From Iphione sp. A-MEVVRFRX5 (Eukaryota), in NCBI GenBank assembly GCA_976226885.1, contig OZ320313.1, forward strand, positions 106,640,001-106,704,000: a DNA stretch of 64,000 nucleotides. Direction: 5' to 3'. The position numbers and the translations under genes were made by a program. This document shows positions 21,531 to 60,644 of this stretch, piece by piece. A model generated the notes under the pieces. It was not told the DNA's origin. It did no database searches and was given only the letters and a program-made list of their open reading frames with translations. How positions within the stretch are numbered: the stretch's first letter is position 1; each line of letters opens with the position of its first letter.

Positions 21531-21618
21531 TCATACACAATCCTCCTGTGACATCAGCAGCGGGTTGACATACTCGAAGCCATCGAACTCTGACTGATCG
21601 ATCTTGCTGATAACTTTC
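21531..21618 (-). CDS. aPKC: aPKC last coding exon ([28 protein letters not shown])
   Basis: Hydrophobic motif F-D-G-F-E-Y with the aPKC-specific phosphomimetic Glu; C-terminal -EDCV PDZ-type ligand; AG acceptor at 21620-21619; TGA at 21533-21531. Confidence 0.96.
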
Positions 21619-21668: not shown

Positions 21669-21817
21669 NNNNNNNNNNNNNNNNNNNNNNNNNNNNNNNN
21701 NNNNNNNNNNNNNNNNNNNNNNNNNNNNNNNNNNNNNNNNNNNNNNNNNNNNNNNNNNNNNNNNNNNNNNNNNNNNNNNNNNNNNNNNNNNNNNNNNNNN
21801 NNNNNNNNNNNNNNNNN
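21669..21817. other. Assembly gap (N run) in the last aPKC intron
   Basis: Run of N. Confidence 0.99.
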
Positions 21818-21908: not shown

Positions 21909-22114
21909 GGGTCATCGGGCGTGAGCTGCACCGGTTCGGTGGTGAACTGGGGGTCAAAGTGCTCGAGGTCTCTCTCAGAGCGCACTGTTGGCTTGTATGG
22001 TGGTGGAATCTGCTTCTCGTAAAGAAGGTCCCAGTCGATGGTGCGGAAGAATGGGTGAGACTGGATGTCTGCAAAACCTGTTTGCGGGTGGCATCCGAGC
22101 CGTTCCGCCGGGTT
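21909..22114 (-). CDS. aPKC: aPKC exon ([14 protein letters not shown]...[14 protein letters not shown]; turn motif)
   Basis: 206 bp, AG/GT boundaries, phase 0 to 2. Confidence 0.96.
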
Positions 22115-22984: not shown

Positions 22985-23080
22985 AACAAGAGTGTGGACC
23001 TGTGAGGTCTATTGTGCCCCGCCATCAACTGCCCATAAAGATGGGGGGGGGGGGGAAGGGGAGAGAAAGAGAGAGAAAAT

Positions 23081-23114
<34 letters not shown>

Positions 23115-23585
23115 TGTCTCTCTCCTTATAACCACCTTGATTGGCAGCTTGTTTTGGGGGTAGTTGGCTAGACTTGTTTAAGTCCTTCAGATTTACAACT
23201 CTCGGTTCTGCCTGACTGGGCACAGCCCCCTCGGTTCTGCCTCACTGAGCACCAGACTGCTACAAACCTTTGGTTCTGCATGACTGAGCACTGAGTGTGT
23301 ATATATGTGCATTGTCAGATCTAGGAACCCCTGAACCAGGTATGTATGTTTGTAGGTGTGTTACGAAAAGAGTAAAATTGGCATAATTTCACCTTCAAAA
23401 TATTTGAATTACTACCAAAATTACCCAGTGCCATGGGGCCATATATACCAATATCATATATTAAAATCAGTTTTTTTGAGTGAAGGGTCTAAGACTTATA
23501 AGACCCATAAGAGTGCGACGGATGGTCGGGACACCAGCTGGCAGCATTCCTAATGTCCCCCCCTCTATGAGGCGGGGGACAATTA
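22985..23585 (+). mobile_element. Helentron-associated (HINE/DINE-1-like) non-autonomous element, copy 1
   Basis: Near-identical to 28819-29421. Sub-terminal inverted repeat ATTGT(G/C)CCCCGCC with a matching GGCGGGGGACAAT at the 3' end, 3' stem-loop, internal (GT)n and short tandem subrepeats. Confidence 0.7.
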
Positions 23586-23637
23586 AGGATTTCGGAAAAA
23601 GATGCCGCTAGCTCAGAGAAGAAAAGATTTGCCATAC

Positions 23638-23717
23638 CTTATTGAGGAACCCTTTCAGGGCAGATGCGGCTTTTACTGACAAGGACCTTGGGATACGGAT
23701 CGTCTTCTCCAAAATCA
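23638..23717 (-). CDS. aPKC: aPKC exon ([27 protein letters not shown])
   Basis: 80 bp, AG/GT boundaries, phase 1 to 0. Confidence 0.96.
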
Positions 23718-25543: not shown

Positions 25544-25669
25544 CTTGGAAGAGGTAGTCCTCTGTGTTTTGGTCCGGGTTGTCCGTATGTCCCACAATAT
25601 CAAATGGTGAACGCCCCGCCAGCATTTCAAACATCAACACACCAAGTGCCCACCAGTCGACACTGAAGT
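25544..25669 (-). CDS. aPKC: aPKC exon ([42 protein letters not shown])
   Basis: 126 bp, phase 1 to 1, kinase subdomain IX plus the aPKC-specific insert. Confidence 0.97.
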
Positions 25670-27096
25670 CTGAAAAAGACAGATTACCAATATATAATTT
25701 ATTTCGAGAATTTCTGCAGCAAAAAGCATCTGCTCAAATCATTGGGTTTCAGCCCTAGGCTGCGCAAGTTGTATGGTTATATCATTACATGAGATTTAGT
25801 CAGAGCAGAATAATGTAATAAATAAACATGTATAATCTTAATATTATATATATAAATAAGAGACATCTCCAGATTGGGGACATAGTATCTACTTCTTCTT
25901 ACAGTTTCATCTTTCAATGCTACGTTCAGATATTGATATTCAAAATTACATAATTTACTTATATTGCCCCCATCAAAGAATGGTAATTTCTGAGGTACTT
26001 AGTAACATTAACATTTCACAATAGGATGGGGGGAAACGCTTTCTTTGATTTTTCAATTCCACGTTGAGTGTACTTCCAGAGTACTACTCCACCTGTATTT
26101 AAAGCGTGCATCACACAATGGTTTCATCTGTTACGAAATAGCTATGCTTGAGCTAGCATTATACATTAACTATGTATCTCTTTCACTTTTTCTGTGTTTC
26201 ATTAAAAAGATAAATCTGCCACGATAGCTTTGACGCTCATATTTTAGAGGATATACAATAGAAGGCAGATCAGCGGTAAACAAATGTATTTGCCAATATC
26301 AGCGATTTCTACGGACTAAGCAGGTTATTAGTAGGTTTTTAGTGCGTCCAGTATTGTAGTACGGGATGAACATTCTTAACTCTCTTGAGTAATCAAAATG
26401 GATACAGTCACACAAAATATTCACCAATTGGTATTGAGAAACGCCACAGTTTAGCTGCTGGGGCTTACTTTTAAAAAAACTATTATTCCTAGGGATGCTG
26501 ATTCAACGTTAGTAACATACCGATGTGCTACCTGGTAAGTATAGGTACAAGGTTAAAGCGAGGGTAAAATACGTTCAGTGTTTGATGGGGAAAATAAAAC
26601 TGTCATATGTACAAGTCAGACCGAATCCTAGGATACGGAGAGCAAATGAACCCCTGTACGGGTCAAAATCCCCTTCTTATTCAACACGTGCGTATCTGTA
26701 TATACATGCACAGGGTCATTTTAAGATGAAAAAAATTGTTTTTGTATTTATATAGATGGACACATACATGTAAATGCATGCATATCATTTGCGGGTGTTT
26801 CTTTTTGGTAGACGAGCCATGAAAATGGTACTTCAGGGAAGATGTTCAAACAACGGTTGAATCGACCCATCACCAAGGAGCGACAGAACATTAAGATGAT
26901 GCTCTGCCTACGACACACTTTACGTTAGTTCTGTGGAGAGTGACATATCTGCGAAGCATCATTTTGATGTTGTGCTACTCTTTGCTGATTGGTCAATTGG
27001 GTCACACCCATGCATGGTTGATGGCTGTAACTGAGGAAGCTTTTTTTTTCTTTCCGAAAAAGCAACAGCATTCTTTGGCACAGCACAGCACCATAC

Positions 27097-27184
27097 CGTA
27101 ATCCTCGCCCCGGAGGATTTCGGGGGCGATGTAATTCGGAGTCCCGCAGAATGTGGCAGTGGTGTCGCCAGCCTTGAGTCCCTC
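27097..27184 (-). CDS. aPKC: aPKC activation-loop exon, variant B ([29 protein letters not shown])
   Basis: 88 bp, catcag acceptor, gtatgg donor, phase 0 to 1, open frame. Confidence 0.9.
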
Positions 27185-28014
27185 CTGATGTGTATTTGCA
27201 GTGGAGGACCGAATGGACAGTGAACCGCCAGAACCCATCACCAATGAGGGGACAACCATTACCATTTTGATGGTTTTATTTTTTTTTCGCAAATGGCACG
27301 AAGGTGCAAGAATGCAAAGGAGAGAGGGTGAAAGAAAAAAAAAAAGGTTGATGATTGGCTACTTCAGTGTGAAATTCTGTGCAACATTCTTAGTCTAATG
27401 TTCAGTACTCCTTCTAAAACCTAAGAATTACACAGAGGGGTTTGCTTTGTGCAGTGAGCCCTGTGGTGCTAACCTGAAAATGAACTGGAACAATAATACA
27501 GCATTCAACCAAGTGTGATGCATCGAAATGACACCTATTATGACTAAAAGCTATGCCAGAATCAAACAACGTATATGAGGTTCTTTTCTCTACTCTGTAC
27601 AAGAGTGTGATGCCATTTACGTCTTTTCAAGAAAGGGTTACATGGAGTGGAGGTTTGATACTGTCTGATGCGTCACACTTGATGTTAACGGAGCATACAA
27701 TCTACACATTGTGACAAGGTGGGGGTAAGGTAATGGCTTTTAGCTTCTTTGCACATGGCCAATTCCTTCGCACGATCTCCTGATGAACAGAAAACTATTT
27801 TACTTGTGGTGAACACTTCTGACTCTTGGAAACCGTGGTATACCCCCCCCCCCCATCAACTGCAGATGAAGCCTTGACTCGGTGGGGGAAAAAAACACAC
27901 CAAAAGCCGTTACCTTTTTGTTGTGCACATTATAAATATAAAAAGCAAGCATGAAAGGAGAGAAAGAGGTCCCAGTTAGGAGGTGCGCTCGGGAGTGTTA
28001 CTTGGAGAGCCTAC

Positions 28015-28102
28015 CGTAGTCCTGTCCTCGCAGCATCTCGGGTGCGATGTAGTTGGGCGTTCCGCAGAAGGTGCTTGTCGTGTCGCCGGGCCGGAGACCC
28101 TC
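28015..28102 (-). CDS. aPKC: aPKC activation-loop exon, variant A ([29 protein letters not shown])
   Basis: 88 bp, tttttaag acceptor, gtaggc donor, phase 0 to 1. Not shown in the ORF track in this frame; translated by hand. Confidence 0.9.
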
Positions 28103-28818
28103 CTTAAAAAGCCACGCGCAGCATGCAAACAGGCCAGCAACACAGTGTTAGTTGATGTCATGAGATGGTTATGGGTAACTCAGGTAGTATGGTTAGGTGG
28201 CACGATTGAAAAGGAAATATTAAAGACAGAGGTATTTAAAAACTAATACATTTGACCTAATGGTTTGGGAACAGATAGAACCACAAAGTTCATAAAAGAG
28301 GGTTGGAGGGAAGCACAGCAGTCTTCCTGAGCGGCCCCCCTTTTTTCATTACAAAAATGAACGCTTATCCACACGTAAAATCTCTCCTAGACCCGCTCTC
28401 ATATGTATGGAGCCTTTCTTCTGTAGTCATCTCTGAATACACTCAGAGAACGCATTTTCTATTCGTGGTTATTATGCTAAAACCACTCTATGGCTGACAC
28501 AAGCCCCTTCTCAACAAATGCCTCGCTACTTGTATGCAGGCTTTCATAGCAATGTCCTTATGGGGTTTCAGGTTTGGCACAAGTTGTAAATGTTGACCAA
28601 AAGGGTTTGAAACTATATTTGCAAGTTTTCCACTAAAGGTTAGGATGTATTTATGTGTTTCACATCCCGTGGAGCTTTGGATAACTAACAAGTGGGAAAA
28701 CTACATAACTAGTAAACATCATGGTTAGTTGGTTATGCCCTGCTGTTTCTACTGTGCCCGAGTTCTGTTGGTTCAAAATATTTGCTGGGCTGATGAACCG
28801 TACAGGTTTCTATACAAG

Positions 28819-29421
28819 ACAAGAGTGTGGACCTGTGAGGTCTATTGTCCCCCGCCAACTGCCCATAAAGATGGGGTGGGGGGGGGGGAAGAAGGGAAGA
28901 GAAAGAGAGAGAAAATGAGTGTGTGTGTGTGTGTGTGTGTGTGTGTAGTGTCTCTCTCTCCTTACAACCACCTTGATTGGCAGCTTGTTTTGGGGGTAGT
29001 TGGCTGGACTTGTTTAAGTCCTTCAGGTTTACAACTCTCGGTTCTGCCTGACCGGGCACAGCCCCCTTGGTTCTGCCTCACTGAGCACCAGACTGCTACA
29101 AACCCTCGGTTCTGCATGACTGAGCACTGAGTGTGTATGTATGTGCATTGTCAGACCTAGGAACTCCTGAACCAGGTCTGTATGTTTGTAAGTGTGTTAG
29201 GAAAAGAGTAAAATTGGCATATTTTCACCTTCAAAATATTTGAATTACTACCAAAATTACCCAGTGCCATGGGACCATATATACCAATATCATATATTAA
29301 AATCAGTTCTTTTGAGTGAAGGGTTTAAGACTTATAAGACCCACAAGAGTGTGACGGATGGTCGGGACACCAGCTGGCAGCATTCCTAATGTCCCCCCCT
29401 CTATGAGGCGGGGGACAATAA
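28819..29421 (+). mobile_element. HINE-like element, copy 2
   Basis: Same family as 22985-23585; perfect 13-bp inverted pair ATTGTCCCCCGCC (28844-28856) / GGCGGGGGACAAT (29407-29419). Confidence 0.7.
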
Positions 29422-30748
29422 AGTGATCTGTGGTTCCATGATGATTTATTACACTACCTATATAAAACGTTGCCTAAAAGTAGTACGGCCATGGGGACAG
29501 CCATGGGAGGAGTTCTCATTGCTGTGAGATATTTTCAAGATCACAGAGTGTGCTAACTTTCATATGTTTGTGTTGATACTTTTAAAAATAATATCTAATG
29601 GCATGTGTTTCTTTTCAAAAAAGACTACATAGAAGAAAATATCCCTAAAGTTGTGTCACTTGGGACTACTTTTTCAGTTAGGTGTATCCCTACATTGGTT
29701 TTCTGTTTACATGGAAGAGTGTACTTAGACCCCACTACATAGGGTGGGGGAGGTGGGGGGGAGCAATAAACCTCCAGCAACTGAGGTCGCCAAAGGCGCT
29801 TGTATTGTCTGAAAACAATGTCGCCCACTGAGTGGAGTTGGCGATAAGGAGGAAACCAATAAGAAAAGGAGAGAGGCCGGCTCGGTCTCACTACTGCCTC
29901 AAACTAAGCTGGTCCTCCGACCATATCCACATGTCTGTGTAGTAAGCTTCAGCCCTTTTCATAGGTATTCAGTTCCCCTTTGGCAGTATTTAACCCTAAA
30001 CATCTGTCAGACACTCACACCAGTGTTTGAAAAAGGTATAAAACGGATAATAAACTGCATAAATCTCGCAACGATTGACCTACCACTAGGCGGTTTAGAC
30101 AATGTCCAGCTTCACTTGCCTGAACCTTTAAAACATTTCCGATTATGGGTTATTTGCTGAAAAGTGAAACAATGTCTGTTACTAGGCAATGCGCAAGGGA
30201 TTAGTGGTTCCACGACGCAAAGACAAGTGAATGCTGGACAATATCCAAGCCACCCAGCGACAGGTCAGTTAGAAGTTTTGTTGCAAAATATTTCTACAGA
30301 TTAGTCAATCAAATCAGTTTAAGTAGAAAAGGTACATAGGCGTGTATAGTAAAACCTCTAGCGGGATACCCTTGGTTCCTAGAGAAAAAGTCCTCATATA
30401 GGGCGTGCCCTCAGTTCTGGGACATAGATAACCTATATATAAAATGCTTGTTCCGAGCAAATCTACCCCAGTATAAAAAATGGTCCTTGTTTTGGGGTAG
30501 CTTCATACCGAGGTTCTACTGTACATTCTTGGGTTTTTTCTCGAAATTTCTTTAACAGACTTTTACATTTGAGAAGTATGCTCTGGTACTCTTCCTACCA
30601 TACGCAACAGTCATTATTATATCAACGATCATTTAAAAAAAATCAAATATCATCAAACTCACAATTCGATTTTCAACATGTTAAAAGCAAAACATGCATG
30701 AAGTCAACTGATACCTGATTCTAAATTCATTTCGGATGTAAATAAGTA

Positions 30749-30925
30749 CAGTGCAGTCTCTATTAACGACCACATCGTTTTGCAACCATTCTCTATTTAA
30801 GACCACCTCAGATTGGTCCCAAAACGCTGTTTTTTCTACATTTTATACTCTATTTATGACAAAATTTGCCAATAAGACCATTTGGGCCTGGTCCCAAGGG
30901 GTGGTCGTAAATAGAGACTCCACTG
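30749..30925. mobile_element. Tc1/mariner-type MITE (177 bp)
   Basis: TIRs CAGTG(C/G)AGTCTCTATT(A/T)ACGACCAC flanked by TA on both sides. Confidence 0.85.
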
Positions 30926-31081
30926 TATGTATATGCAAAATTACAATTTGACATTTTTAATATGGATATAAATTTTCTAAATAAATGCCAGTCGTGTGCG
31001 CTCTCAATGAATAATTCAATGGCTAGTACAATTTAATGATACATATATTTACTGGCTGCTGGCTGCTTATTCATCTGTTTA

Positions 31082-31273
<192 letters not shown>

Positions 31274-31924: not shown

Positions 31925-32061
31925 CCTTCTCATGCAGGAAGTTGAGAGCCAGACAGATTTCCGCCGAGTAGAAGCGTGCATGCTCCTCTGGCAGCCGGCG
32001 CTGGCGCTGCATGTGGAACATGAGGTCCCCGCCATTGACAAACTCTATCACAAAGAACAGT
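31925..32061 (-). CDS. aPKC: aPKC exon ([45 protein letters not shown])
   Basis: 137 bp, AG/GT boundaries, phase 2 to 1. Confidence 0.97.
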
Positions 32062-33146: not shown

Positions 33147-33244
33147 CTGCTTGGTGTTTGGAAGCATGAGTGAAGGCCGACGAGGAACGGGTGATTGGAA
33201 GCCACCTCAAATACATGCTTCTCTGTTTGCACCCAGTCAATATC
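33147..33244 (-). CDS. aPKC: aPKC exon ([32 protein letters not shown])
   Basis: 98 bp, AG/GT boundaries, phase 0 to 2. Confidence 0.97.
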
Positions 33245-41720: not shown

Positions 41721-42429
41721 CTGTGGCAACAACAACCATATACACCACCTAATCTTTCCTGTTAACCCTTTATACGCAGTTGTATCAAGTGTATCCCGGC
41801 ACTCGATAATCAGGTACGCCCTGCAACCTTGTCTATCAGGCCTGCGACATGAAGGACTGCAAGGACCTTTTACAAAAACCAAATCTATCACAGGATAAAA
41901 AAAACCTCAACCCTTTTGCCAGTAAATCTAGATGTACACATTTTCTGTGATTACTATATAGAAGGTAGTTACACGTGGGTTAATGTGTCATAGCATCTGG
42001 TATATGGTTTGATTTATGTTAAATTCTGGTAGGTTTGCAGCTAATAGGAATTTTAATCAAGATGCATGTCACTAGAAAAGATGAGTGCGGAATAAAAATG
42101 ACAAAACTGCGCTCAATTCCCACCTTCCTCATAACGCCTCTCCTAAATACATTCGTTTTTTAAACGAAAACAGTAAACTTTATGTCCCCGTTGGGCTTCC
42201 CACTATTTTGAGTCAAGAGAAACCACAGCTTAATCCAGAACAACTTTTAAAAAAAGCGATAAATTTTAAGTTTCAATGAATTTGATTTTTCGCGTCGTGA
42301 CGTACTATATGACAATAACCTAGGTGAAAAAAGCTACAGGTATTTTTGTTCACCTGTTCAAAGGCAGATTGTGTACACATATGCCACACTGAAGCGAGTC
42401 ACGTTTAGAAACAGCGTCTGCGTACTCAC

Positions 42430-42561
42430 CACGGTGCCGCCACAGGAGAGCTTGATGAGTTTGTGACATTTCTTGTGCACAAGTAGCTTACAGTTGATGC
42501 ACTTGTAACCCTGGCGGCCCAGCCCCCAGATCCGGTCTGAGCAATACGCACAGAAAGCACG
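42430..42561 (-). CDS. aPKC: aPKC C1-domain exon ([44 protein letters not shown])
   Basis: 132 bp, phase 0 to 0, atypical C1 zinc finger. Confidence 0.97.
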
Positions 42562-45500
42562 CTGCAAGAGAGAGGTAAGACCGAGGTAGGCAGTTAGTTT
42601 GATGTTGGTTATGTGTGAAGGTGAGACGAAAGACACTGTGGATGAAAAGGTTGGCTTTAGGTCATAATTGAAGGAATAAAACACATTGTCATGGAGGTGG
42701 GGCCACCTCCTCTTGGAGTAGAGGTCACTGGGGGTTATGACCCTAGTATGTGGGAAGGTCACTGCATCATAAGTAAACAAAGTGTTGGTACTGGAACTGT
42801 TCCCTTATTCCAAATCTGGCAACCTGTGTCCAGTACTCTGGTAACGTTTCCATAACTGACTCAGGAAAACAGGAAGTTATACAATCTGTTATGTAGTTTT
42901 CACTATGAATAGACCTGTTATACAACCATCACTGTATATAAGACTGATGTTTCTGTGAATAAATAGATACTCTCTCCCTGCACTTTGAGAGAGACACCCA
43001 GCAGAGTTTTGTATGTACAGCGAACCAGAATTCTTTGTGAGGACATTCTTCACTTCACAAACCGCTTCTGAGCTGTGATCTGTTAGTCACCAGACTGGGC
43101 CCACGTTACAATATCTTTCTTTTTAGCTGACAGGGGGTCCTGCTTGGTGTGACCAGGTCATACGATCTCACAGTAGACCTCTAATGGATAGTAGATGAAC
43201 TAAAGTTCATAACAGGTTTTCAAGCTCCCCCCCCTTCCCGACCCAACAATTATTCTCAGCATAGGAGGCGGAACCCTATTTGGCCTGCGCGATCCACGAG
43301 GGTAGGTGGTCATCAAAACCACCACCCCCTACACACAAAAATACATGACGTCTCATACAGAGGGGCTGCGTTGTCCACATCAGCCTTTGAATGAGGTGTA
43401 TTAACCACACATGTTTATTATTAAAGGTTTACAAAGTTGCGTCAAAGGCTGTCTCTTCTAAACAACTGCTCTTTTTGTCGCACTGTCCCTCGAGTCCTTG
43501 AGGTGGCTATCTACTTATTTCAGAATGTTCGGCGGTCATTTTTGGCTGAAGCATGTTTGTTCATACTCAGACTTGAACCCGGTACTTCTCACACCACAGG
43601 CAGACATATCAGTGCGCCACGAGCATGGTGTTTAGCTCATAAGATAATACTCTTCAACGTCAAGGTCACTCCGAACACTAGGGTGTGATGCCATCAGGAC
43701 TGCATGGCCCTGGATACTTCCTGGAGTGCGTCAATACGAGCCTTAATAAATATTTGCTTTCATGATTTATGAGTCTACGTGGCCAATATGACGTTACCAA
43801 GTTGATAAGGTGAGACAATAACAAGCGACTAATACAAAGAAAACAAACGACAGAATCTGAAATAAAGCAACCCGCAATAAAAGAACGGGTACACATTACG
43901 GTTAATTAGACCGAATTCTGTTTGAAGAGAATACCATTCACAAGTATGTTGTTGATCCCATATATGAGTACTGCGGTAGGTTATTTTAGACGCAATTATA
44001 TGGTATATTAAAAAGAATAGAAACTGGCCTCAGATATCTGCAGTTTAAAGTTAGTACTGGATCATTCATAAAAAAAGAAGCTAAAGTTAAATGAATATAA
44101 CCAAAAATAAATATTCTGATACTTAATTCTTCCCCAAGAGTTGCACGGATGATAATTATAATAAACTTAATCATTATTCTCGATTTATAACAGAAACATG
44201 ACTTTGAACATTATATTAATCTAGACCATTTTATTACTACTTTGATATTCTTTCTAGCCAAGTAAATTATATGGTGAGCCTAAAATGAATTGGCACACAA
44301 AGTACCTGCAAGGTAAATCTTTTTGCTTATAAGGTTGTTACAACGACAAAACAACATGATGCAAAGTTCGTTAGTACTGCGGACATGGGTGTATGTTAGA
44401 TATTTTTAGCGAAAAGACGTAATGGTACCTACAGTCAACACGGGGCAAAGGAGGATATCAACATGGTCAATAAATATTCACCGATCCGAAAGTACATTCT
44501 TCATGCCCATTCTTCCAAAAAATGTCAGTATCCCACAAGCAAAATGTTAAAAGGTCTTCCTTACGCCTACCCTGCTTCACGTATTTCTGAAAGCCTAACC
44601 ACACCGACATACGACCTCCTCTATATGTGGGTTGAGGTACATACATCACTGCATTAAGATGACTCTCACAGCTGCTGTGGTAGCGACAGGATAACAGTAC
44701 TTTTACGGACAAAAACGCCAAGAGATTTATCTTTCCGATTTTACCATTTACACTCATTTACGTTTTACTTCTCCAATATGCTTGAATATCAATACAGAAT
44801 AACTGTGCGACAGTCCAAATCAACTATAGAAACGAAGATGCGTCTAGAAAGGGACACAACATGAGCTTTACATGATCTTGTTCTTCAAACAGGCTATATA
44901 TTATGATTATATGTAATACGTCAGTATAAATACGTGTACATGTATATATAATGTTCGCATGCATGAACTGCCCTCGTCTTTTACGTGACGTTTCCATTTA
45001 TATACAAATATGAGACTAAAACACAAATACCATTACCTCCAGAGCAAAACACCTTTCACAATGCCGTCAGCGAAATCCAAACCGATTTTGGCTTTTTCCT
45101 ACAGAAATGCCGGTATCCTCCACAAAGAGTGGCCAACGACATCAAAAGGGTTCCTTCGCAAACAGCCCACTTGCGGTCTATAGTTACTACTACGTTTCCA
45201 GCCTCAACTCACAGCGACAGTCGATAGGGTAACGTGAATGATGATCATGCTGGCGGTCAATGTCAGTCGGGCTGCTTTCTGGGTCTAGTCGTTCCATGTA
45301 TATGAGTCGGTGCTCCCTTGATAGACAGTAGATTCCAATTTGCCCTGCCCCCCCCCAACTCCTACATGCCCTTGCTATATAAGAGTAATCATACGTGTAT
45401 ATTATATCGTTTAACATCAGCGGCGCCACCCCTATGTTTGATCCCTGGTGGCCGTCGTTTTTAGGCCCCTTTGGAGGACTTCATCGCCAAATGAATGCCC

Positions 45501-48253: not shown

Positions 48254-48678
48254 ACAAGACTGGACCTGCAAGGTCTACTGTCCCCGATCACCAAGTGGCC
48301 ATTTCAGGCTTGATTGCACCTCTTGTGGTCAGACTGCTACAGGGTCGTGCTGGTAGAGGGGGGGGGGGGGGTTAGTGCATGGTGTGTGTCTGTGTGTGTA
48401 TGTGAGTGTATTGACAGACACAGAAATCCCTAAAGAAAGTATTATGTTTGTGGGTGTGTTAGCAAAAGAGTAAGTTAACATAATTTCTCCTTTAGAACAT
48501 TTGAATAAATACTAAAATTACCCAGTTTCTATACATAAATATCATATATTAAAATCAGTTCATTTGACTGAAGGGTTTTAGAATTATAAGACCCACAAGA
48601 GTGTGACAGAAGGTTGGACAGTTGAACAGCAGCATTACTAAGGTACCCCCATCCCCCTCTATGAGGTGGAGGACATAA
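48254..48678 (+). mobile_element. HINE-like element, diverged copy 3
   Basis: Shares the 5' GGACCTG..AGGTCTA.TGTCCCC, the CAAAAGAGTAA...ATAAGACCCACAAGAGTGTGAC block and the CCCCTCTATGAGG..GGAC 3' hairpin with copies 1 and 2. Confidence 0.65.
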
Positions 48679-49149
48679 ATTTTAGTTTACTGGTGCCAGC
48701 AGGACTACTTTTGCCATGACCATGACCTTGTTAGTGCTGGCTCAACTCACCTCTAATGTTTCCAAAGGAATGGAGGGTTATCACTTAAATTAAATTTTGG
48801 TAATCAAAGTTGTGTGGAGGACCACCACACAGCCATTTTGATTGTGTGTGAAGTACCTAGCGTAGTGATCTACAGGTGGTACCAGTAAAGTAGAGCTGAG
48901 CCAATAAAACTATATTTATTAAGGTCAATTATGATGCAATGTGAAAAAGAATACATTTTGCTAATAAAGCCAGCAAATCTGTTGCAACTTCCTCCTTCTG
49001 TCCCAGAAATCTAACACCTTTTATTTGCTGTCTAACTGATTACAAAGAATGTATTTCCAATTAACGGTAACGGCTAGTGGCAATATCTGACGGTATTTCC
49101 CTTTAGAAAACTAAAGTAAATACAAAACAAGAACAAAAATAGTTCCCAG

Positions 49150-50007: not shown

Positions 50008-50093
50008 CCTGCTGAACCGCTTGGCTTGGAAGAGGTGGCCATTGACGCGGTAAAGCTTCCTCCATCGTCGAGCCCCGCGTCGGTACATGTTAC
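50008..50093 (-). CDS. aPKC: aPKC pseudosubstrate exon ([28 protein letters not shown])
   Basis: 86 bp, phase 1 to 0; [11 protein letters not shown] pseudosubstrate is diagnostic of atypical PKC. Confidence 0.97.
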
Positions 50094-51763
50094 CTGCAAA
50101 GCAAAGACCCAAACTGTCAAAAACGTGTGAAAATCACTGGTGTTATACACAGGACAATCACTGACAACATGCCATCTGCAAAAATCCTGAATCCATAGAT
50201 GGCAGGCAGAGGGACTGACATCAGTCCTTCCTGCACCAATCACTAACACTGGGCCGGATGGTCGATACCAATAACAAAGAGCATCTATTTGTAGGCCCTT
50301 TGCCAATAGTCTTGCGGGAGATGGGGGCCGGGATGTGGCAAAAGGGGGATTCTCAGTGATGGAAACAAAAGAGAATCTCTACCATGAGCTGGTCTTGAAT
50401 GCAAGGACATTATTTGCAAAGCACGAGCTCTGAAATTGGCATCGTTTGACGCGCATGACGTAAGCTGGGCAACACCCGTGAGACAAAATAATCGCAATAA
50501 CACACAATTCCGATATGTAACTCTATTAATGAATCCTCTGAGAACAAAACCTCTTTATAACGAACTTAGCCATCTCTGTAGAATATGTGGCCTTAGCTCA
50601 CTTTTCAACGAACCGGTTTGTGAAAAAGAAACGCTGGAAAGGAAACTGAATAACCAATATATATATATATATATATATATCGTTGTATAAAGACAAATGA
50701 TTTTTTTAAAGGTAAGTATCAAGGTGAATATGTTGTAAATGCCTCCATAAACAGTATGATTCTGATAACGAAGTTTCCCACAGCGAAATTCTAAGGAACA
50801 CATCTATTGCGAGTTTTCAGTTTCCGTGTCTCTGTCTTTCTGTTCTTACTCCCCCACGTCTCTTACTCCCGACTAACCTGTCATTATCTGCCAAGCACTG
50901 GGAGCTATAGACCACCAGACACCGTTGCCTGTATGGAACTGAAGAAACAACTCCCGACGTACCTACCTATTCAACAAGCAAGTGGCACGTGCATTGCAAT
51001 CAAACGTTCGGACACGTGCTCAGGATACAAAAAGCAATCATACATTTCCTGCTGTATAGGGTATGTGGCGTGTAGAATGCAAGAGGGAAAAAGAGGGTCC
51101 TAAAGTAGGTATCTTTATCCTTGGTAAAGTTATGTCCCTTCTTTGCTCTGCCCCTCTACCTAATATCACTTCTCACTTCTCATCTTATCTGTCTGTCAGG
51201 GCGCATAGTTTTTCCTTTGTCCATCCTATCTTCTCTGTGCGCTCCAAATTAACGCCCGGCCCATTCTGACGAGGGAGTTGGATTAGACTTCTACATGTAA
51301 ATGAAAATATAGGGAAACAACAATGATGGGTTCTACTAAGGCAGGTTAAGAGGCAGCTGCACTGCAGTTTTAAAGCAGAACTGTTGATACTGCAAACCAA
51401 CATATCTAGGGAGGAGGTGGGGAGTAGGGGGACTGAGAGACAGCCAGAAGGATAAGCGCACTGATTCCTAGAGATCCAGGCAAATTTACTTCAAGAGACG
51501 CGAAAAGCAAGTCAAAGGTGCACGCAAAAAGGCATTAACAGAGCAGAAGGAGACACTGATACTTCTAATTTGGTATTCTCATTAAAAGTTTAGCTTTACG
51601 TAATAAAGTCAGGGTCCCTTCACCTCCATTACATATACTAAACATAGCTTCAGAATATACTTCGGTATAACACATGTGTCTGCATTTTCCTCTTCCGTAT
51701 TTAATTTTGTTGTTACTGCTTTCAAATTCTTCCCATGAAAACGACCAGCAGGATCGGACTTAC

Positions 51764-51953
51764 TGGGACTAGCGTCTCTGTCCTTGACCTTGCAATCATC
51801 GACCTTGTCCTCATTGACTTTGACGCTCTTGTAGGTAACCTTAACCTTCTTCTCTTCACTGCTAGGGGGTGTAGAGCTCAGTTTTTGGTAGTAGTTGCGA
51901 CACTTGTGTTTGGAGGACAGGCAAAGGTCAAGGCCACACAGGCGCAAACCTTG
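51764..51953 (-). CDS. aPKC: 3' part of a candidate alternative first coding exon of aPKC (QGLRLCG...KDRDASP), split by the Ngaro insertion
   Basis: Open frame ending in a phase-1 gtaagt donor (51763-51758) compatible with the 50093 acceptor; in frame with ATG GCG AGG CTC on the far side of the element. Confidence 0.65.
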
Positions 51954-52635
51954 TATCACTCTAAACGACATCCCGCAATGATCATAACATAGAACAAACA
52001 ACAGATAAGAAATACAATGGCAGACATAGTTTAATTCTGAATAACATGGGAATAACCTCTTGAGGCAGATGTGAGAAAACCTTATGTACTAATGTCTCTA
52101 GAGACAGCGATGTACAATCAATGGACATAGAGTAAACAAACAATCTGGAAATGTGAAGATAATCACAATGGCAATGCCACAAGACCTAGCATACAAATCA
52201 TAGGGTTACAGAGGAAAAAGATAATAAACGATATACATATGAGCCCTTGGGTGGGCGGGCGTGGTAATCAAAGCAGCGAATGCTGAACTGGTCTAATCTA
52301 AATATAGCGCCAAGGCGCCTAGCTAATCAACAGAGGGCATCGCGGTCTGCGAATCGTAATACCTTGCAATCCCCTAGGGAGTAGCTTACATATCACTCTA
52401 AACGACATCCCGCAATGATCATAACATAGAACAAACAACAGATAAGAAATACAATGGCAGACATAGTTTAATTCTGAATAACATGGGAATAACCTCTTGA
52501 GGCAGATGTGAGAAAACCTTATGTACTAATGTCTCTAGAGACAGCGATGTACAATCAATGGACATAGAGTAAACAAACAATCTGGAAATGTGAAGATAAT
52601 CACAATGGCAATGCCACCATTGAGCCAAGGGCTAG

Positions 52636-53553
52636 TTACGCCTCCGAGAGGAGGGACTTGATCTTTTTGGATGCTTTCTTGCTCGAAATAGAGGAGCTAG
52701 TGTACATGAGAGATGAAGGGAGAGCCTTCCAAGTACCCTGGGACATAATTTGTGTATCAGAGGCGTCTGCCTCCTGGAGGGCCTGTGCACCTCCCCGTCT
52801 AAAGCTGTGGAGACTATAAGCTTGGGGGGCCTCACCCAGGTGAGATAGTATTGACCTGAGAACCTTAGTGAGCCTTTGGGCAGGGAATGGAGCCTTATAC
52901 ACTGGGTCGGTGAATAAGGGCTGTAGATGGTTATGAGTTGGAATGATGGAATACATATGCTGGATGAGTGTGACAGGGCAGATAGGAGTGCCCAGACGTG
53001 GGATATGAATGGTGCGGGAGTCGGACAATTTAATGGTCTTGGACCACTTGAGAACTATGCTTAGTCCATCAGAGGAGAAGGCAATGTCGCCTCTGGTGAG
53101 TTGCTTGAACGGATCAAATGCAGATGATGATTTGGCGCATATATTGCTCTGGCGGACTAGTGAAAAGAAAAGAAAAGAGAAAATGGACTTCAATACAGTA
53201 CCCAGGGGGCCCAGGGCGTTGCAATATGCCACTATCCTAGCCAATAGGGGGGAGGTGATGGGGGCTTTCTGAATCGGAATGTGTGAGGAGGTGAGCCTAA
53301 CTGCCTTTAAGGCATTAGCAACCTTAGGTGAGCGTATGGCGACAACATTGAAATCACACTGATTGAGTAGAAAAGTGAGAGATGAAATGTACTGTGAAAT
53401 AACTGAGGGTGTGTAGGAAAGATATACCAGATACTCAATGAACACCAGGATGTGGTATACTTGGAGATGCTTGATATCCATAGCGTAGTGGTGGAAGAAG
53501 GCTATGGCGAGGGCGGCCTGTTGCATTCTCCTGGAGTTGGTTCTGGGCGTCAC
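52636..53553 (-). CDS. Tyrosine recombinase (ORF3)
   Basis: Catalytic set FFSLVRQSN (R), WSKT (K), HSFRRGG (HxxR), GTWK (W), SLMY (Y). Frame is open upstream to 53667; first ATG at 53526. Confidence 0.93.
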   Translation of the reverse strand: MTPRTNSRRMQQAALAIAFFHHYAMDIKHLQVYHILVFIEYLVYLSYTPSVISQYISSLTFLLNQCDFNVVAIRSPKVANALKAVRLTSSHIPIQKAPITSPLLARIVAYCNALGPLGTVLKSIFSFLFFSLVRQSNICAKSSSAFDPFKQLTRGDIAFSSDGLSIVLKWSKTIKLSDSRTIHIPRLGTPICPVTLIQHMYSIIPTHNHLQPLFTDPVYKAPFPAQRLTKVLRSILSHLGEAPQAYSLHSFRRGGAQALQEADASDTQIMSQGTWKALPSSLMYTSSSISSKKASKKIKSLLSEA

Positions 53554-53612
53554 CGACTGAAACTGCCTATGGTGGGCGTTGGTGAGCCAGGATGCTATAT
53601 TCGGGTCTGTAA

Positions 53613-55556
53613 TCAGAATGAGGATATATGTGATACCAGAGAGGGAGGGACTGCGAGCCTGTGTAAATTAGTATGGTCATTAAGAAAGCGCTTGACTATA
53701 GACCGGTATTTTGGAGACGTGGGGAGTCTTGAGAGTGCATCGGCTATAATCATCTTTTCTCCTGGTAAGTGGGTGAATGCTAGGGAAACGTTGAAGCGTG
53801 CAGCCCTATACCAGACTGCACGCAGGACCTTAGATAAGAAGGGGTCCCTGGTCTTACCAGAACTTAGGACAGAGATTGTAGCTGAATTATCACAGATCAA
53901 CTCTATTCTCTTGTTTCGGGTCTCAGGGCCTATGAATAGATGAACGGCGACGGCGGTATTAAATGCTTCTAGCTGAGAAATTGGTAACTTGGAGAGAAGA
54001 GGGGGAATGGGCTCTGTATAGTAGAAAGATGAGTTGTAGGCCCCCATGCCTACAAGGCAAGCGTCACAGAAAATAACATCAGAGATGATCGGGGGAGGAA
54101 TGAGACGAATACCATTAAAGTGAGGGAGGTAGGTGAGAAACCAGGAAAGGTCCTTCTTCACAGAAGGGGTAAGGAGGACTGAATCAGACTTGGATGCTGA
54201 GGTCGCTCTGAGCTGTTCAAGGAGAGAGTTTATGAAAAATCTGGCCGGAGGGGAGCATTTGACTATATGATTAATGAGACCTATCAGGCTCTGTGCTTGT
54301 CTAAGAGAAATGTGAGATTGATGTATGACTTCGGATATGGCAGTTAATAACTGAGTGATTTTGGAATGGGGAATAGACATGGTGCGATGAACGGTGTCAA
54401 AGGTCACTCCAAGCCAGGTTAGAGTATGAGAAGGGTGAACGCATTTCTCGTGGGCTAACTGCAGCCCCAAGTTGGAGATGAAGAGCTGTGCATAGGAGAA
54501 GGCAGATGATAGTTGTTGTCTGGAGCTAGATATGAATACATAGTCATCTAAATAAGCATAGATGGAAACGTCTGGAAAAAGAGTAGATATATGGTTGACT
54601 ATTGCAGTAGAAAGCTCTTGGAGGAGTAGAGACGAGTATCGTGTGCCGAAAGGGAGTGAAATGTCTAAATAGAATTTGTGGTTGAAATTGAAGGGGAGCA
54701 AGGGCCAGTCCAGGGGGTCAACTGGGAAGTATCTATAGGCTCTTTTGAGGTCAAGTGAAGCTAGAGATAGATCAGTGGTAGAGGAAGAAATGAGCTTAGC
54801 TACGTCATGGGTAGTTGGGAGGGAAACTTTAAGTGGGATGGAGAAATAATCATGTCTGGGAATACCTGCATTCACTTGTGAGTGAGACAAGTCAAAAATG
54901 ACCCTCCTGTCACTTGAATCCTTCTTGGACCTAGTCATGATTGGATTTAGGATCTTGGGGTCTGAAAATGGATGATCGTCGAACGGTCCACATATAGCCC
55001 CGGCGGCGAGTTCTGTACATAGGTATTTAGTGATATGCTTGGTATCTAATGGGTTAACGGGGTAAGGTCGTATTGGGGCTGGTAGAGATGAATGAGCATA
55101 ACCTAATGGGAAGCCATAAGTGAGAAAATCGGACAAGATAACACCTTTGTGTCCTAAGGGACTCAGAAATGAATACCAATTCTGCAAGTTTAACTGAGAC
55201 GGTAATATGACTCTGGCTTCCATGAAGTTAGGGAGGCCAGTACATCTTATAGATAAATATGTATTAGAAAGGTCATTTGGCAATTGTGGTCCGGGAAGTG
55301 GCCAGTTGAATATCCTGTGTGAAATCATTTGATAGTGAGACCTGGAAAAAAATGAATGTTCATTAGAAATGGAGCGATGCAGTTCAATGGCTAACAAGTC
55401 GTAGGGATCTGGCTCGATGAAGTCGTCTTGGCAATTCACCAGTCCTGGGTCTCCTGGCGTTGTTGGCGCTGGTCTTTCGGTTGACTTGCGGTCCAAGGCC
55501 TGGTCTGCTGGCGATCTTGTGAGGTCTGCTGCTGGGCCCTTTTCTTTGACCTGCAC
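53613..55556 (-). CDS. Reverse transcriptase / RNase H (ORF2)
   Basis: RRVIFDLS, SLDLKRAYR, LPFG, AYLDDY, LTWLG; RNase H FCDAC, QLEAF, CDNS, ADALSR. Listed start is GTG; frame opens after TAA at 55583-55581. Confidence 0.95.
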   Translation of the reverse strand: MQVKEKGPAADLTRSPADQALDRKSTERPAPTTPGDPGLVNCQDDFIEPDPYDLLAIELHRSISNEHSFFSRSHYQMISHRIFNWPLPGPQLPNDLSNTYLSIRCTGLPNFMEARVILPSQLNLQNWYSFLSPLGHKGVILSDFLTYGFPLGYAHSSLPAPIRPYPVNPLDTKHITKYLCTELAAGAICGPFDDHPFSDPKILNPIMTRSKKDSSDRRVIFDLSHSQVNAGIPRHDYFSIPLKVSLPTTHDVAKLISSSTTDLSLASLDLKRAYRYFPVDPLDWPLLPFNFNHKFYLDISLPFGTRYSSLLLQELSTAIVNHISTLFPDVSIYAYLDDYVFISSSRQQLSSAFSYAQLFISNLGLQLAHEKCVHPSHTLTWLGVTFDTVHRTMSIPHSKITQLLTAISEVIHQSHISLRQAQSLIGLINHIVKCSPPARFFINSLLEQLRATSASKSDSVLLTPSVKKDLSWFLTYLPHFNGIRLIPPPIISDVIFCDACLVGMGAYNSSFYYTEPIPPLLSKLPISQLEAFNTAVAVHLFIGPETRNKRIELICDNSATISVLSSGKTRDPFLSKVLRAVWYRAARFNVSLAFTHLPGEKMIIADALSRLPTSPKYRSIVKRFLNDHTNLHRLAVPPSLVSHISSF

Positions 55557-56413
55557 TGGTCCAGCTTGTGTTCGAGCTGTTTATTGTGGAGTAGAAGACA
55601 AAATGGGCATATATGAGAAAAATGCACATCATTTGCTGCATGAGGAGAGTTTTCAGTACACTTGCCTCCGAACCATTGGGGGCATGGAACAGTAGTGTCT
55701 TTCTGAAGGCCCAGTGTGTCCCGAGTAGCCCTAGTGTGAGCATTAATACATCGTTGTTTGATTGACTCGATCCTGGCTGTATCAGACCAAGAGAGTCGAT
55801 CGTTCCCAGTTAAATGCCATATCTCGACAAGCCATTCCCTGACAGGGGCCCAGCCACTTGCCTGGACCTCCTCGGATGTGTCTCTGATATGGGCAACAAG
55901 AGTCAGAATGTCAGCTGGGTAAACAATCGATGGGTCTAAGAGCATGCCCATTATGGACGATACGTATTGAGGAAAGGTGAATTTCCTCAAGTCGGGCTTA
56001 TCAGTCTCTGGAAATACCACATAGGAAGCTGGATTTGGCCGTGCCATTTTCTTACCTACTGTCTCGAGAGCAGCTGGGTACATGTGTGTGAAGATCTCCT
56101 GGATCTTGGAGGCGGCCTCTGTCTTCAGAGCAGCTGGTTGTGGTGGAGGTGTAGCTTCGTCTGCATTGCCGTCGTCATCGGGTGTGCTTGAGCCGGCGGT
56201 CGAGGTGGAGGGTGCGTCAGCCATTTTAGCTGCCGCTGCACGTGTGGTGACCGTTGGAGCTGGATTTTTCTTGGACTTCTTGGACTCCTTGGGCTCCTTA
56301 GGCTCCTTTGGCTCCAGTCTGTCCAAGCGTTCTTCAATGGCTTTCATTTTATCCAGCATTTTGATCAGCAGGTCACCCTCTTCCTCGGTAATACCTTTAT
56401 GGGTCTCCGGCAT
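55436..56413 (-). CDS. ORF1 (gag-like) with C-terminal Cys/His cluster
   Basis: ATG in good context (accATGc) just after repeat A1; CPQWFGGKC...HICPFC...H...C; overlaps ORF2 by 121 bp. Confidence 0.85.
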   Translation of the reverse strand: MPETHKGITEEEGDLLIKMLDKMKAIEERLDRLEPKEPKEPKESKKSKKNPAPTVTTRAAAAKMADAPSTSTAGSSTPDDDGNADEATPPPQPAALKTEAASKIQEIFTHMYPAALETVGKKMARPNPASYVVFPETDKPDLRKFTFPQYVSSIMGMLLDPSIVYPADILTLVAHIRDTSEEVQASGWAPVREWLVEIWHLTGNDRLSWSDTARIESIKQRCINAHTRATRDTLGLQKDTTVPCPQWFGGKCTENSPHAANDVHFSHICPFCLLLHNKQLEHKLDQCRSKKRAQQQTSQDRQQTRPWTASQPKDQRQQRQETQDW

Positions 56414-56568
56414 GGTAGCTACTTACACGTCTGACCCGAGCGAAATCAAAGCAGCGAATGCTGAACTGGTCTAATCTAAATATAGCGCCAAGGCGCCTAG
56501 CTAATCAACAGAGGGCATCGCGGTCTGCGAATCGTAATACCTTGCAATCCCCTAGGGAGTAGCTTACA

Positions 56569-56580
56569 GAGCCTCGCCAT
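56569..56580 (-). CDS. aPKC: 5' part (MARL) of the candidate alternative aPKC first exon
   Basis: accATGG Kozak context; in-frame upstream TGA at 56628-56626; joins codon-exactly to 51953 when the element is removed. Confidence 0.6.
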
Positions 56581-59344: not shown

Positions 59345-59492
59345 NNNNNNNNNNNNNNNNNNNNNNNNNNNNNNNNNNNNNNNNNNNNNNNNNNNNNNNN
59401 NNNNNNNNNNNNNNNNNNNNNNNNNNNNNNNNNNNNNNNNNNNNNNNNNNNNNNNNNNNNNNNNNNNNNNNNNNNNNNNNNNNNNNNNNNNN
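59345..59492. other. Assembly gap (N run)
   Basis: Run of N. Confidence 0.99.
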
Positions 59493-60572
59493 GTGGGCTG
59501 CAGCACAGTGTGTCACTGCGGATTCTTGCCTGGCAGAATACTGGCGCCAGGTGGAGAGCAGCTTCAGAAAGATAATGTCGGCAAGACTGGGAGGTGAGCA
59601 GAAGTGTGAGTGAGTGTACGTGTGTGTTTGTATGCGTGCGCACGTGCGTTGTTTGCGGAGGGTCCGAATGAGTAAAGTGTATATGAGTACACGCGCGTTT
59701 CCATTCGTTTGGCAGTATGCTGAATCTGTGTAAGAACTAACTTCATCTCTCTTCATTTACCATGAGTGACGGTCACCTTAGTCCCAATATACATGTACAT
59801 ATTTTTATGCTTAAAAGATATTATAAAAACTGATGGCGGGAAATAACTGTTTTAAATGAAACTCTGTTGTGCATATAACTGATAGTAAATCATCAAAGTA
59901 CGCTTCAGATCTGACTGCATTCTGTTGTATAAAAAAAAGGTTAACTAGCAGGGTATGAATGATACAGAGAACACGGAGAGCATTTGGAGAACGATATGGC
60001 AATAACCTATGGTATTTTCTGCGTCTCGCCAAAGTGACGCATCATTACAGAAGAACGAAACGTTCCATTCATACGAGACATCGCGAGATGTGGCTAAAAC
60101 CAAGCATTGGGTAAAAATATAAAGCAGCCAGTCAACGTCTGTTTCCGATTAAGAGTACTTCCACCAGTTTCTAGAGAGTTTTGGCAAGGCCAGAACATCT
60201 CTTCGAATTCTTGCGTGAGACATACATTTCTGTGAGTAATATGTTGCCACTATCTAGAGCGAGGAATGACAAGGCGTGGGGGATGACTCAAACCATGTGT
60301 ATGACTTGGGACGTCCTCCGATATTCTACCCGTTCCTAACCACGATGTGTATACAGTGTGTATGTGTGTGTCCTTTATTTCCTGCTCTCTTCAGTACAGA
60401 TAAACGTAATATCACGTTCGACCTTTTTCCACACCAAGTTATAATTACCCTTCATGCTTATTTAGGTGACACTAGGAAGTGGAGTGGTTATCCTCTGACC
60501 ACCAACAGGTGACTAATCAGACTTCTGCCCCCCTGTACACCCACTCTCTCCACTCTCTCATACACACGCACA

Positions 60573-60574
<2 letters not shown>

Positions 60575-60638
<64 letters not shown>
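60575..60638. repeat. (CT)n microsatellite
   Basis: Visible run. Confidence 0.97.

Positions 60639-60644
<6 letters not shown>

What the first reader, a model, noticed from the sequence alone, without database searches (positions are those of the whole stretch)
27097..28102. Duplicated, mutually exclusive activation-loop exons in aPKC
Seen: two 88-bp exons 830 nt apart, both with AG/GT ends, identical phase (0 to 1) and intact frames. A = [29 protein letters not shown]; B = [29 protein letters not shown]. They differ at 5 residues but at many synonymous sites, which indicates old duplication with purifying selection on both. Including both or neither shifts the frame, so use must be mutually exclusive. 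Established: the Thr of TFCGT is the PDK1 site controlling aPKC activity. Inference: splicing swaps the residues around that site (Ser versus Ala at -1, RP versus KA, Met versus Ile after APE), giving two catalytically tuned kinases from one gene. Vertebrate PRKCI/PRKCZ have a single such exon as far as I know.
Basis: partly seen in the sequence, partly recalled or inferred. Interest (0 to 1): 0.8.

Follow-up and report, generated by a model that had tools for sequence, protein, structure and literature searches.

The report
Alternative activation-loop exons in worm aPKC
An atypical protein kinase C gene of a marine worm-like invertebrate carries two old, intact copies of the 88-base exon that encodes the kinase's activation loop. 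Only one copy fits per mRNA. The same either-or exon set occurs in leeches, other annelids, a lamp shell and molluscs, where databases list both isoforms but no paper I could find describes them.

Summary
On the minus strand, exon A (28102-28015) and exon B (27184-27097) are each 88 nt with AG/GT ends and the same phase. They differ at 5 of 29 residues and at about 73% of synonymous sites. They lie between aPKC kinase exons 31215-31130 and 25669-25544. Including both, or neither, gives a premature stop more than 370 nt before the last exon junction.

The same tandem pair sits between the same flanking exons in:
- the window's nearest relatives (L001, L002/L052);
- clitellate-like annelid contigs;
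- the leech Helobdella robusta;
- the brachiopod Lingula anatina.

In all of these the first copy reads APE-M and the second reads APE-I. Orthologous B-B comparisons give dN/dS of 0.01-0.04, so B is a selected coding exon.

Lingula, Aplysia, Gigantopelta and Mytilus have RefSeq isoforms of equal length that differ in this exon; Haliotis isoforms carry both versions too. Oysters have three versions. cDNA-like annelid contigs carry either A (L011) or B (L027).

No RNA run could be listed for this species, so use of both exons here is inferred. The functional "tuning" is untested, and the Ser/Ala change at -1 is not a conserved A/B difference.

Verdict: real, ancient, and a new member of a known kind (mutually exclusive tandem exons).

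The parts
28015..28102 (-). Exon A (first copy): 88-nt activation-segment exon, [22 protein letters not shown], phase 0 to 1
   Evidence: AG/GT ends. 97% identical to the same segment of annelid-like transcript protein P0121.
27097..27184 (-). Exon B (second copy): 88-nt alternative activation-segment exon, [22 protein letters not shown], same phase
   Evidence: AG/GT ends and an intact frame. Orthologous copies in L001, L002, L083, Helobdella and Lingula.
27185..28014 (-). 830-nt intron between the two alternative exons
   Evidence: It does not align to the other flanks. It is long enough to be spliced, so steric exclusion is not the mechanism.
31130..31215 (-). Upstream constitutive kinase exon (..[29 protein letters not shown]), the donor shared by A and B
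25544..25669 (-). Downstream constitutive kinase exon ((D)[20 protein letters not shown]), the acceptor shared by A and B
33147..33244 (-). Kinase exon k2
31925..32061 (-). Kinase exon k3
23638..23717 (-). Kinase exon k7 ([27 protein letters not shown])
21909..22114 (-). Exon k8 (end of the kinase domain and the turn-motif region)
21531..21618 (-). Last coding exon (..[21 protein letters not shown], then the stop). An N run at 21669-21817 lies in the preceding intron.
42388..42564 (-). C1-domain exon of the same gene (approximate ends)
50008..50090 (-). Pseudosubstrate exon ([28 protein letters not shown]; approximate ends)

Best explanation
Exons A and B are a tandem-duplicated, mutually exclusive exon pair in an atypical protein kinase C (PKC iota/zeta-type) gene.

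Each exon encodes the whole activation segment after the DYG motif: the loop with the PDK1-site threonine (TFCGT), the P+1 loop (GTPNYIAPE) and the first turn of helix alpha-EF. Splicing joins the upstream donor (31130) to either A or B, and then joins that exon to the acceptor at 25669.

Because each exon is 88 nt (3n+1), an mRNA with both or with neither is frameshifted. It ends in a premature stop far upstream of the last junction, so it should be removed by nonsense-mediated decay. One gene therefore makes two kinases that are identical except for 5 residues of the activation segment.

Shown here:
- the anatomy, frames and premature stops;
- conservation of the ordered pair (APE-M first, APE-I second) in annelids and a brachiopod;
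- purifying selection on both copies;
- use of either version in transcripts or RefSeq models of relatives.

Inferred:
- that both are spliced in this species;
- that exclusivity rests on frame and NMD;
- that the two isoforms differ in activation-loop phosphorylation, stability or substrate and partner handling.
For: - Anatomy and junctions.
- Frameshift: A+B gives a stop 372 nt before the last exon junction, and skipping both gives a stop 379 nt before it.
- The same pair between the same flanking exons: L001 and L002; L052, L056, L057, L065, L067, L068, L073, L077, L078, L083 and L085; Lingula anatina L088; Helobdella robusta L090. All copies inspected in L002 (by eye), L088 and L090 have AG/GT ends.
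- Position 23 is Met in every first copy and Ile in every second copy.
- Selection: A versus B has pS 0.73 and pN 0.10. L083-B versus L057-B has pS 0.58 and pN 0.015 (omega 0.014). L001-B versus L002-B has omega 0.044. The A copies of L001 and L002, and of L083 and L057, have pN 0.
- Expression in relatives: the spliced contig L011 is a full-length A isoform and L027 is a B isoform. Annelid-clade transcript proteins P0121-P0125 are the A type, and P0128 and P0185 are the I type.
- Equal-length isoform pairs: Lingula X1 and X2 are both 609 aa and differ in this exon, as do the pairs in Aplysia, Gigantopelta and Mytilus; Haliotis isoforms also carry both versions. Oysters have three versions, which lie in a row in the genome.
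Against: - There are no RNA data for this species. The look-up of sequencing runs listed nothing, so read laying could not be used.
- No protein in the searched collections comes from this species; the best match is 94% identical over the kinase part.
- Transcripts recovered from any one annelid sample carry only one version, so same-species alternative use in annelids was not shown. It rests on Lingula and the molluscs.
- RefSeq X-isoforms are model predictions, and I could not inspect their RNA support.
- No functional difference between the isoforms has been measured anywhere.
Confidence: 0.85

Rival explanations
1. Only one of the two exons is used in this species. The other is a silent relic that has not yet decayed, or is used so rarely that it has no function.
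For: No RNA evidence for this species. In annelid-like transcript sets each sample shows one version only. The annotated Helobdella model uses only the second copy.
Against: Both copies keep their frame, length and AG/GT ends here and in every relative examined. Synonymous sites are saturated while non-synonymous change stays at or below 0.15, and orthologous B-B and A-A comparisons give omega of 0 to 0.04. A relic would not be held like this across annelids and a brachiopod. Both types are found in transcripts of different annelids.
Confidence: 0.08
2. The second exon acts mainly as a regulatory 'poison' unit. Including both exons creates an NMD target that sets aPKC dosage, and the protein difference does not matter.
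For: A+B inclusion gives a premature stop 372 nt before the last junction. The 830-nt intron between A and B could be spliced.
Against: A poison exon needs no conserved protein sequence, yet B is held at the amino-acid level (22 of 29 columns are invariant across the nine copies aligned; omega 0.01-0.04). B is also found as the only version in complete coding transcripts (L027, P0128, P0185, Lingula X2).
Confidence: 0.04
3. Assembly artefact or chance similarity: a collapsed or duplicated stretch mimics a second exon.
For: None beyond the general possibility. An N run exists elsewhere in the gene (21669-21817).
Against: The copies are 25% diverged at the DNA level and their flanks do not align. 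The same ordered pair occurs in independent assemblies of other species.
Confidence: 0.01

Closest known systems
RefSeq-predicted aPKC isoforms of Lingula anatina (XP_013393560.1 X1 vs XP_013393561.1 X2) and of molluscs (Aplysia NP_001191516.1 vs XP_035828559.1; Gigantopelta XP_041378089.1/XP_041378090.1; Mytilus californianus XP_052083236.1/XP_052083237.1; Haliotis; oysters)
   Same: The same gene and the same 88-nt exon position between the same flanking exons. The isoform pairs are of equal length and differ in this exon. In Lingula the genomic order (APE-M copy, then APE-I copy) is the same as in the window.
   Different: In molluscs the order is APE-I first and APE-V last, and oysters have three copies. 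Orthology of the mollusc set with the annelid/brachiopod pair is therefore unresolved. These are database models; I found no paper on them.
Mutually exclusive tandem-duplicated exons in other kinases: PRKCB/Pkc53E/pkc-2 and FYN exon 7A/7B (PMC9741552); JNK (MAPK8-10) exon 6a/6b and p38-alpha (own knowledge)
   Same: A tandem exon duplication is used one at a time, giving kinase isoforms with a swapped homologous segment. These events are ancient and conserved.
   Different: Those events swap the C-terminal tail (PRKCB), the SH2-kinase linker and ATP-site region (FYN), or C-lobe segments (JNK, p38). Here the swapped unit is the activation segment itself, including the PDK1-site threonine and the P+1 loop.
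Known aPKC transcript diversity: PKM-zeta alternative promoter in vertebrates; hinge-region splice inserts in Aplysia PKC Apl III; delta-C1 isoform in Helix (PMC7104321, PMC6539039)
   Same: The same gene family; isoforms made from one gene.
   Different: All of those change the regulatory or hinge part. None touches the catalytic core, and the papers I could read do not mention an alternative kinase-domain exon.
Human PKC iota kinase domain structures (5LI1, 5LI9, 5LIH, 4DC2, 3A8W, 1ZRZ)
   Same: The annelid A-isoform kinase domain aligns end to end with them (E 1e-207). The human activation segment equals exon A except for Ile after APE, plus Glu in place of the window's Gln.
   Different: Vertebrate-like sequence shows a single exon here (L047; not pursued further).

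Membership tests
Mutually exclusive exon cluster from tandem exon duplication | Neighbouring exons in one gene, on the same strand, with no other exon between them | tested here: met
   A and B lie 830 nt apart between exons 31215-31130 and 25669-25544.
Mutually exclusive exon cluster from tandem exon duplication | Homologous sequence, equal or near-equal length, same splice phase | tested here: met
   Both are 88 nt, phase 0 to 1, with 24 of 29 residues identical and AG/GT ends.
Mutually exclusive exon cluster from tandem exon duplication | Joint inclusion or joint skipping is incompatible with the reading frame | tested here: met
   Premature stops lie 372 nt and 379 nt before the last junction.
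Mutually exclusive exon cluster from tandem exon duplication | Transcripts contain exactly one of the exons, and both versions occur | tested here: inconclusive
   Met in relatives: Lingula, Aplysia, Mytilus, Gigantopelta and oyster isoform models and annelid cDNA-like contigs L011 (A) and L027 (B). Not testable for this species, because no RNA run was listed.
Mutually exclusive exon cluster from tandem exon duplication | Both copies are conserved under purifying selection in other species | tested here: met
Atypical protein kinase C (PKC iota/zeta type) | AGC kinase domain with the activation-loop TFCGT, turn motif and a Glu-containing hydrophobic motif (F-x-G-F-E-Y), C-terminal ..EDCV | tested here: met
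   The window's exons translate to these motifs. The kinase part is 94% identical to aPKC protein P0124. The nearest full-length relative matches human PKC iota structures at E 1e-207.
Atypical protein kinase C (PKC iota/zeta type) | Pseudosubstrate plus a single atypical C1 domain | tested here: met
   Exons at about 50090-50008 and 42564-42388.
Atypical protein kinase C (PKC iota/zeta type) | N-terminal PB1 domain | tested here: not met
   No PB1-like exon was found on the minus strand upstream of 50133 within the window (tblastn E up to 5). It may lie beyond position 64000. This concerns the window's extent, not the family assignment.

The most novel reading that the evidence does not exclude
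aPKC of annelids and brachiopods, and possibly of all lophotrochozoans (molluscs have their own two- or three-exon set at the same site), has carried two interchangeable activation segments since before these phyla split. If so, the core polarity and memory kinase exists there as two catalytic-core isoforms that have never been compared. This would be an undescribed isoform switch. It also bears on Aplysia PKC/PKM Apl III work, where the cloned cDNA represents only one of the two versions.
Probability: 0.6. Interest if true: 0.6.

Novelty: new member of a known kind. Interest (0 to 1): 0.5.

Why it matters
aPKC is the catalytic heart of the Par polarity complex. In molluscs it is also the source of a memory-related PKM. 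An either-or exon that replaces the whole activation segment (PDK1 site, P+1 loop, start of helix alpha-EF) is unusual among kinases. It has been kept for hundreds of millions of years in at least annelids and a brachiopod, with a parallel or related set in molluscs.

This gives a natural, minimal pair of kinase variants (5 residues apart here) for asking how activation-loop context affects priming by PDK1, dephosphorylation, stability and substrate choice. It also warns that published invertebrate aPKC clones and gene models (the Aplysia cDNA, the Helobdella model) represent only one isoform.

For this genome it is one more case in a long list of conserved mutually exclusive exon pairs.

Tried and rejected
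- **RNA evidence.** With hindsight, a shorter exon-rich query might have passed the one-twentieth-of-words threshold.
- **Word search with the stop-free stretch around exon B.** It returned only 65-206 aa fragments. These were useful as handles for loci but not for isoforms.
- **The look-up of encoding contigs for Lingula X1 (P0249) and Ostrea X1 (P0282).** These found nothing, because only one product per gene is on record. P0127 and P0164 worked instead.
- **Lys at position 4 as a marker of the B copy.** Rejected: in Helobdella the first copy has Lys and the second has Arg.
- **Ser to Ala at -1 of the PDK1 threonine as the functional point.** Rejected as a conserved feature, because that position varies freely among B copies.
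- **Steric exclusion by a short intron.** Rejected: the A-B intron is 830 nt here and about 300-3800 nt in relatives.
- **U12-type splice-site incompatibility.** Nothing suggests it: both donors are GT with no U12-like consensus (read by eye).
- **Competing RNA pairing (docking and selector sites).** An inverted-repeat scan of 25545-31215 gave only short, chance-level pairs. Introns of relatives are too diverged to test conservation.
- **Exon tree to decide orthology with the mollusc copies.** Not attempted: only about 7 variable columns.
- **Bougie et al. 2009 and 2012.** Not held in the library.
- **The large representative-protein search.** Not used, because the word search and the loci answered the question.
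- **A vertebrate-like contig (L047).** It was among the metagenome hits. It differs from the human sequence shown at one residue of the next exon. I used it only in the bulk exon scan and did not pursue it.

Full report
**1. The observation**

The minus strand of 26900-28300 shows two 88-nt units. Exon A is 28102..28015 and exon B is 27184..27097. Each is preceded by AG and followed by GT. The flanking intron sequence does not align.

A tblastn of an annelid-like aPKC protein against the whole window finds this segment exactly twice (E 7e-14 and 1e-12). A brute-force search for GT/AG boundaries that keep the frame recovered these kinase exons:
- 33244-33147
- 32061-31925
- 31215-31130
- A or B
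- 25669-25544
- 23717-23638
- 22114-21909
- 21618-21531

The split codon at the downstream junction is G|AC (Asp). The pseudosubstrate and C1 exons lie at about 50090-50008 and 42564-42388. No PB1 exon lies inside the window.

**2. Frame logic**

With A alone or B alone the reading frame runs to the normal end. With A+B, a stop appears in the next exon, 372 nt before the last exon junction. With neither, a stop appears 11 codons after the junction, 379 nt before the last junction. Both aberrant products are textbook NMD substrates (established knowledge of the 50-55 nt rule). The 830-nt A-B intron is long enough to be spliced, so exclusivity is not steric.

**3. Selection**

A versus B in the window: 15.5 of 21.3 synonymous sites differ and 6.5 of 65.7 non-synonymous sites differ (pS 0.73, pN 0.10).

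Between species, synonymous sites are saturated while the protein is held:

| Comparison | pS | pN | omega |
|---|---|---|---|
| L083-B vs L057-B | 0.58 | 0.015 | 0.014 |
| L001-B vs L002-B | 0.66 | 0.067 | 0.044 |
| L001-A vs L002-A | 0.83 | 0 | 0 |
| L083-A vs L057-A | 0.76 | 0 | 0 |

Neither copy is decaying.

**4. Relatives: genomic arrangement**

Fragments from a word search with the stretch around B led to two loci, L001 (an ENA assembly) and L002 (NCBI GCA_029980185.1). Both hold upstream exon, A-like exon, B-like exon and downstream exon within 1.8 kb. In L002, read by eye, both copies are 88 nt with AG/GT ends.

A scan of metagenome contigs with an alignment of nine copies brought in 80 loci. 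A tblastn survey found the ordered pair in L052, L056, L057, L065, L067, L068, L073, L077, L078, L083 and L085, with spacing of about 0.4 to 3.8 kb among these contigs.

Three named genomes were fetched through their annotated proteins:
- **Lingula anatina (L088):** an APE-M copy at 23986, then an APE-I copy at 24450.
- **Helobdella robusta (L090):** an APE-M copy at 6999 that the gene model does not use, then the annotated APE-I copy at 7718.
- **Molluscs:** Aplysia (L087) has an APE-I copy followed by an APE-V copy. Crassostrea virginica (L089) has three copies in a row.

Every first copy in the window, L001/L002, the L083 group, Helobdella and Lingula has Met after APE, and every second copy has Ile. 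Window A is closer to the Lingula first copy (pN 0.052) than to the second (0.114). Window B is closer to the second (0.091) than to the first (0.127). One duplication before the annelid-brachiopod split is the simplest reading. Whether the mollusc set, which has a different order, shares that origin is open.

**5. Who the unnamed loci are**

A maximum-likelihood tree of the kinase and C-terminal region, with the alternative exon masked, places L011, L027 and L083 with Helobdella and several transcript-derived proteins in one clade (support 99/96). The window is nearest to L001 (93% identity). That group sits next to the clade, but the tree does not resolve its position.

Earlier notes of this scan call the genome annelid-like. 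My tree is compatible with that but does not prove it.

**6. Relatives: transcripts and isoforms**

Two metagenome contigs are spliced copies, with all exons contiguous:
- L011 encodes a complete 610-aa aPKC with the A version.
- L027, from a different species (80% nucleotide identity), encodes the B version.

A search with the L011 protein plus cluster look-ups gave the following, read out.

| Taxon | Finding |
|---|---|
| Annelid-clade transcripts | P0121-P0125 carry the A type; P0128 and P0185/P0283 carry the APE-I type |
| Lingula | X1 and X2, both 609 aa, differ in this exon |
| Aplysia | the cloned cDNA NP_001191516 carries the APE-I version; model X1 (same length) carries the APE-V version |
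| Gigantopelta | X1/X2, equal length, differ in this exon |
| Mytilus californianus | X1/X2, equal length, differ in this exon |
| Haliotis | isoforms carry both versions |
| Oysters (Crassostrea, Ostrea, Saccostrea) | three versions among 599-aa isoforms |
| Sea stars, a brittle star, amphioxus (many isoforms), the nemertean Lineus, cnidarian-like and vertebrate-like contigs | one version only |
| Arthropod-like sequences | lack the intron before this exon |

P0185 and P0283 are filed under the gregarine Ancora sagittata. Because they sit in the annelid clade, they are probably host contamination.

**7. What could not be shown**

No reads were laid, so the use of both exons in this species is inferred from conservation. 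No retrieved protein comes from this species (best match 94% identical).

**8. Mechanism and function**

The exon encodes the activation segment from just after DYGMCK to the start of helix alpha-EF. The human PKC iota structures match the annelid kinase domain end to end (E 1e-207). The human segment equals exon A except for Ile after APE, plus Glu in place of the window's Gln.

That the Thr of TFCGT is the PDK1 site is established knowledge. From memory, it is Thr412 in human PKC iota and Thr410 in PKC zeta.

It does not hold as a conserved feature, because B copies carry A, S, H, Y or N there. The constant difference is Met versus Ile after APE. There is also a tendency for the second copy to depart from the canonical RPGDTT stretch.

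So each copy keeps one ancestral half. A keeps the canonical loop. B keeps the canonical APE-I. A difference in loop priming or dephosphorylation, P+1-pocket packing or partner binding is plausible but untested.

**9. Literature**

Searches combined aPKC with mutually exclusive or alternative exons, the activation loop, PKC Apl III splicing, and tandem exon duplication in kinases or molluscs. They found no description of this exon pair.

- Papers on mollusc aPKC describe hinge inserts and a delta-C1 isoform only.
- A survey of tandem duplicated exon substitutions lists PRKCB (with fly Pkc53E and worm pkc-2) and FYN, but not aPKC.
- The two Bougie papers are not held.
- The library does not cover most subscription journals, so absence is not proof.

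**10. Verdict**

The functional tuning is unproven and was partly mis-specified.

It is a new member of a known kind of feature. It is already visible as database isoform models in a brachiopod and molluscs, and appears undescribed in print.

Noticed in passing
window 28819-29427 and 22986-23590: A roughly 610-bp interspersed repeat is present in two introns of the aPKC gene, in the same orientation and 94% identical. It borders AC/CT microsatellites. A weaker third copy may lie near 48530-48690 (seen only as a similar translation).
   Followed up: partly
L027 1-2419 (JGI contig Ga0115594_1026754): The spliced B-isoform contig has no PB1 or C1 coding part. Its open frame starts in the hinge after an upstream stop, like a PKM-type short transcript. 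This raises the question of whether exon B use is linked to an internal promoter.
   Followed up: no
L089 9033-9675 (Crassostrea virginica): Oysters have three tandem versions of the exon, each 88 nt with AG/GT ends. Each version appears in 599-aa RefSeq isoforms of Crassostrea, Ostrea and Saccostrea.
   Followed up: partly
L090 6999-7086 (Helobdella robusta KB096134.1): The first (APE-M) copy is intact but is not part of the annotated Helobdella protein, which uses only the second copy.
   Followed up: partly
P0126 (Pinctada imbricata, 681 aa) and P0258 (Haliotis asinina X3, 487 aa): These look like gene-model errors at this site. The Pinctada protein reads through the intron and contains two versions of the exon. 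The Haliotis model runs from the APE-V exon into intron sequence and ends.
   Followed up: no
P0185 / P0283 (EukProt, Ancora sagittata): Two aPKC transcripts are filed under a gregarine parasite but group with annelid sequences. They are probably host-worm contamination of the parasite transcriptome. They differ by a hinge insert and both carry the APE-I version.
   Followed up: partly
window 50133-64000, minus strand: No PB1-domain exon of the aPKC gene was found upstream of the pseudosubstrate exon within the window. Another first-stage note places a Ngaro retrotransposon at 51764-56580.
   Followed up: partly
window 21669-21817: An N run lies inside the last intron of the gene. It was left as it is.
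   Followed up: no
junction codon at 28015/27097 | 25669: The residue after ..DY is Asp (G|AC) here, and also in molluscs, the brachiopod, echinoderms, a hemichordate and ticks. It is Gly in vertebrates, insects, cnidarians, Helobdella and L027.
   Followed up: no
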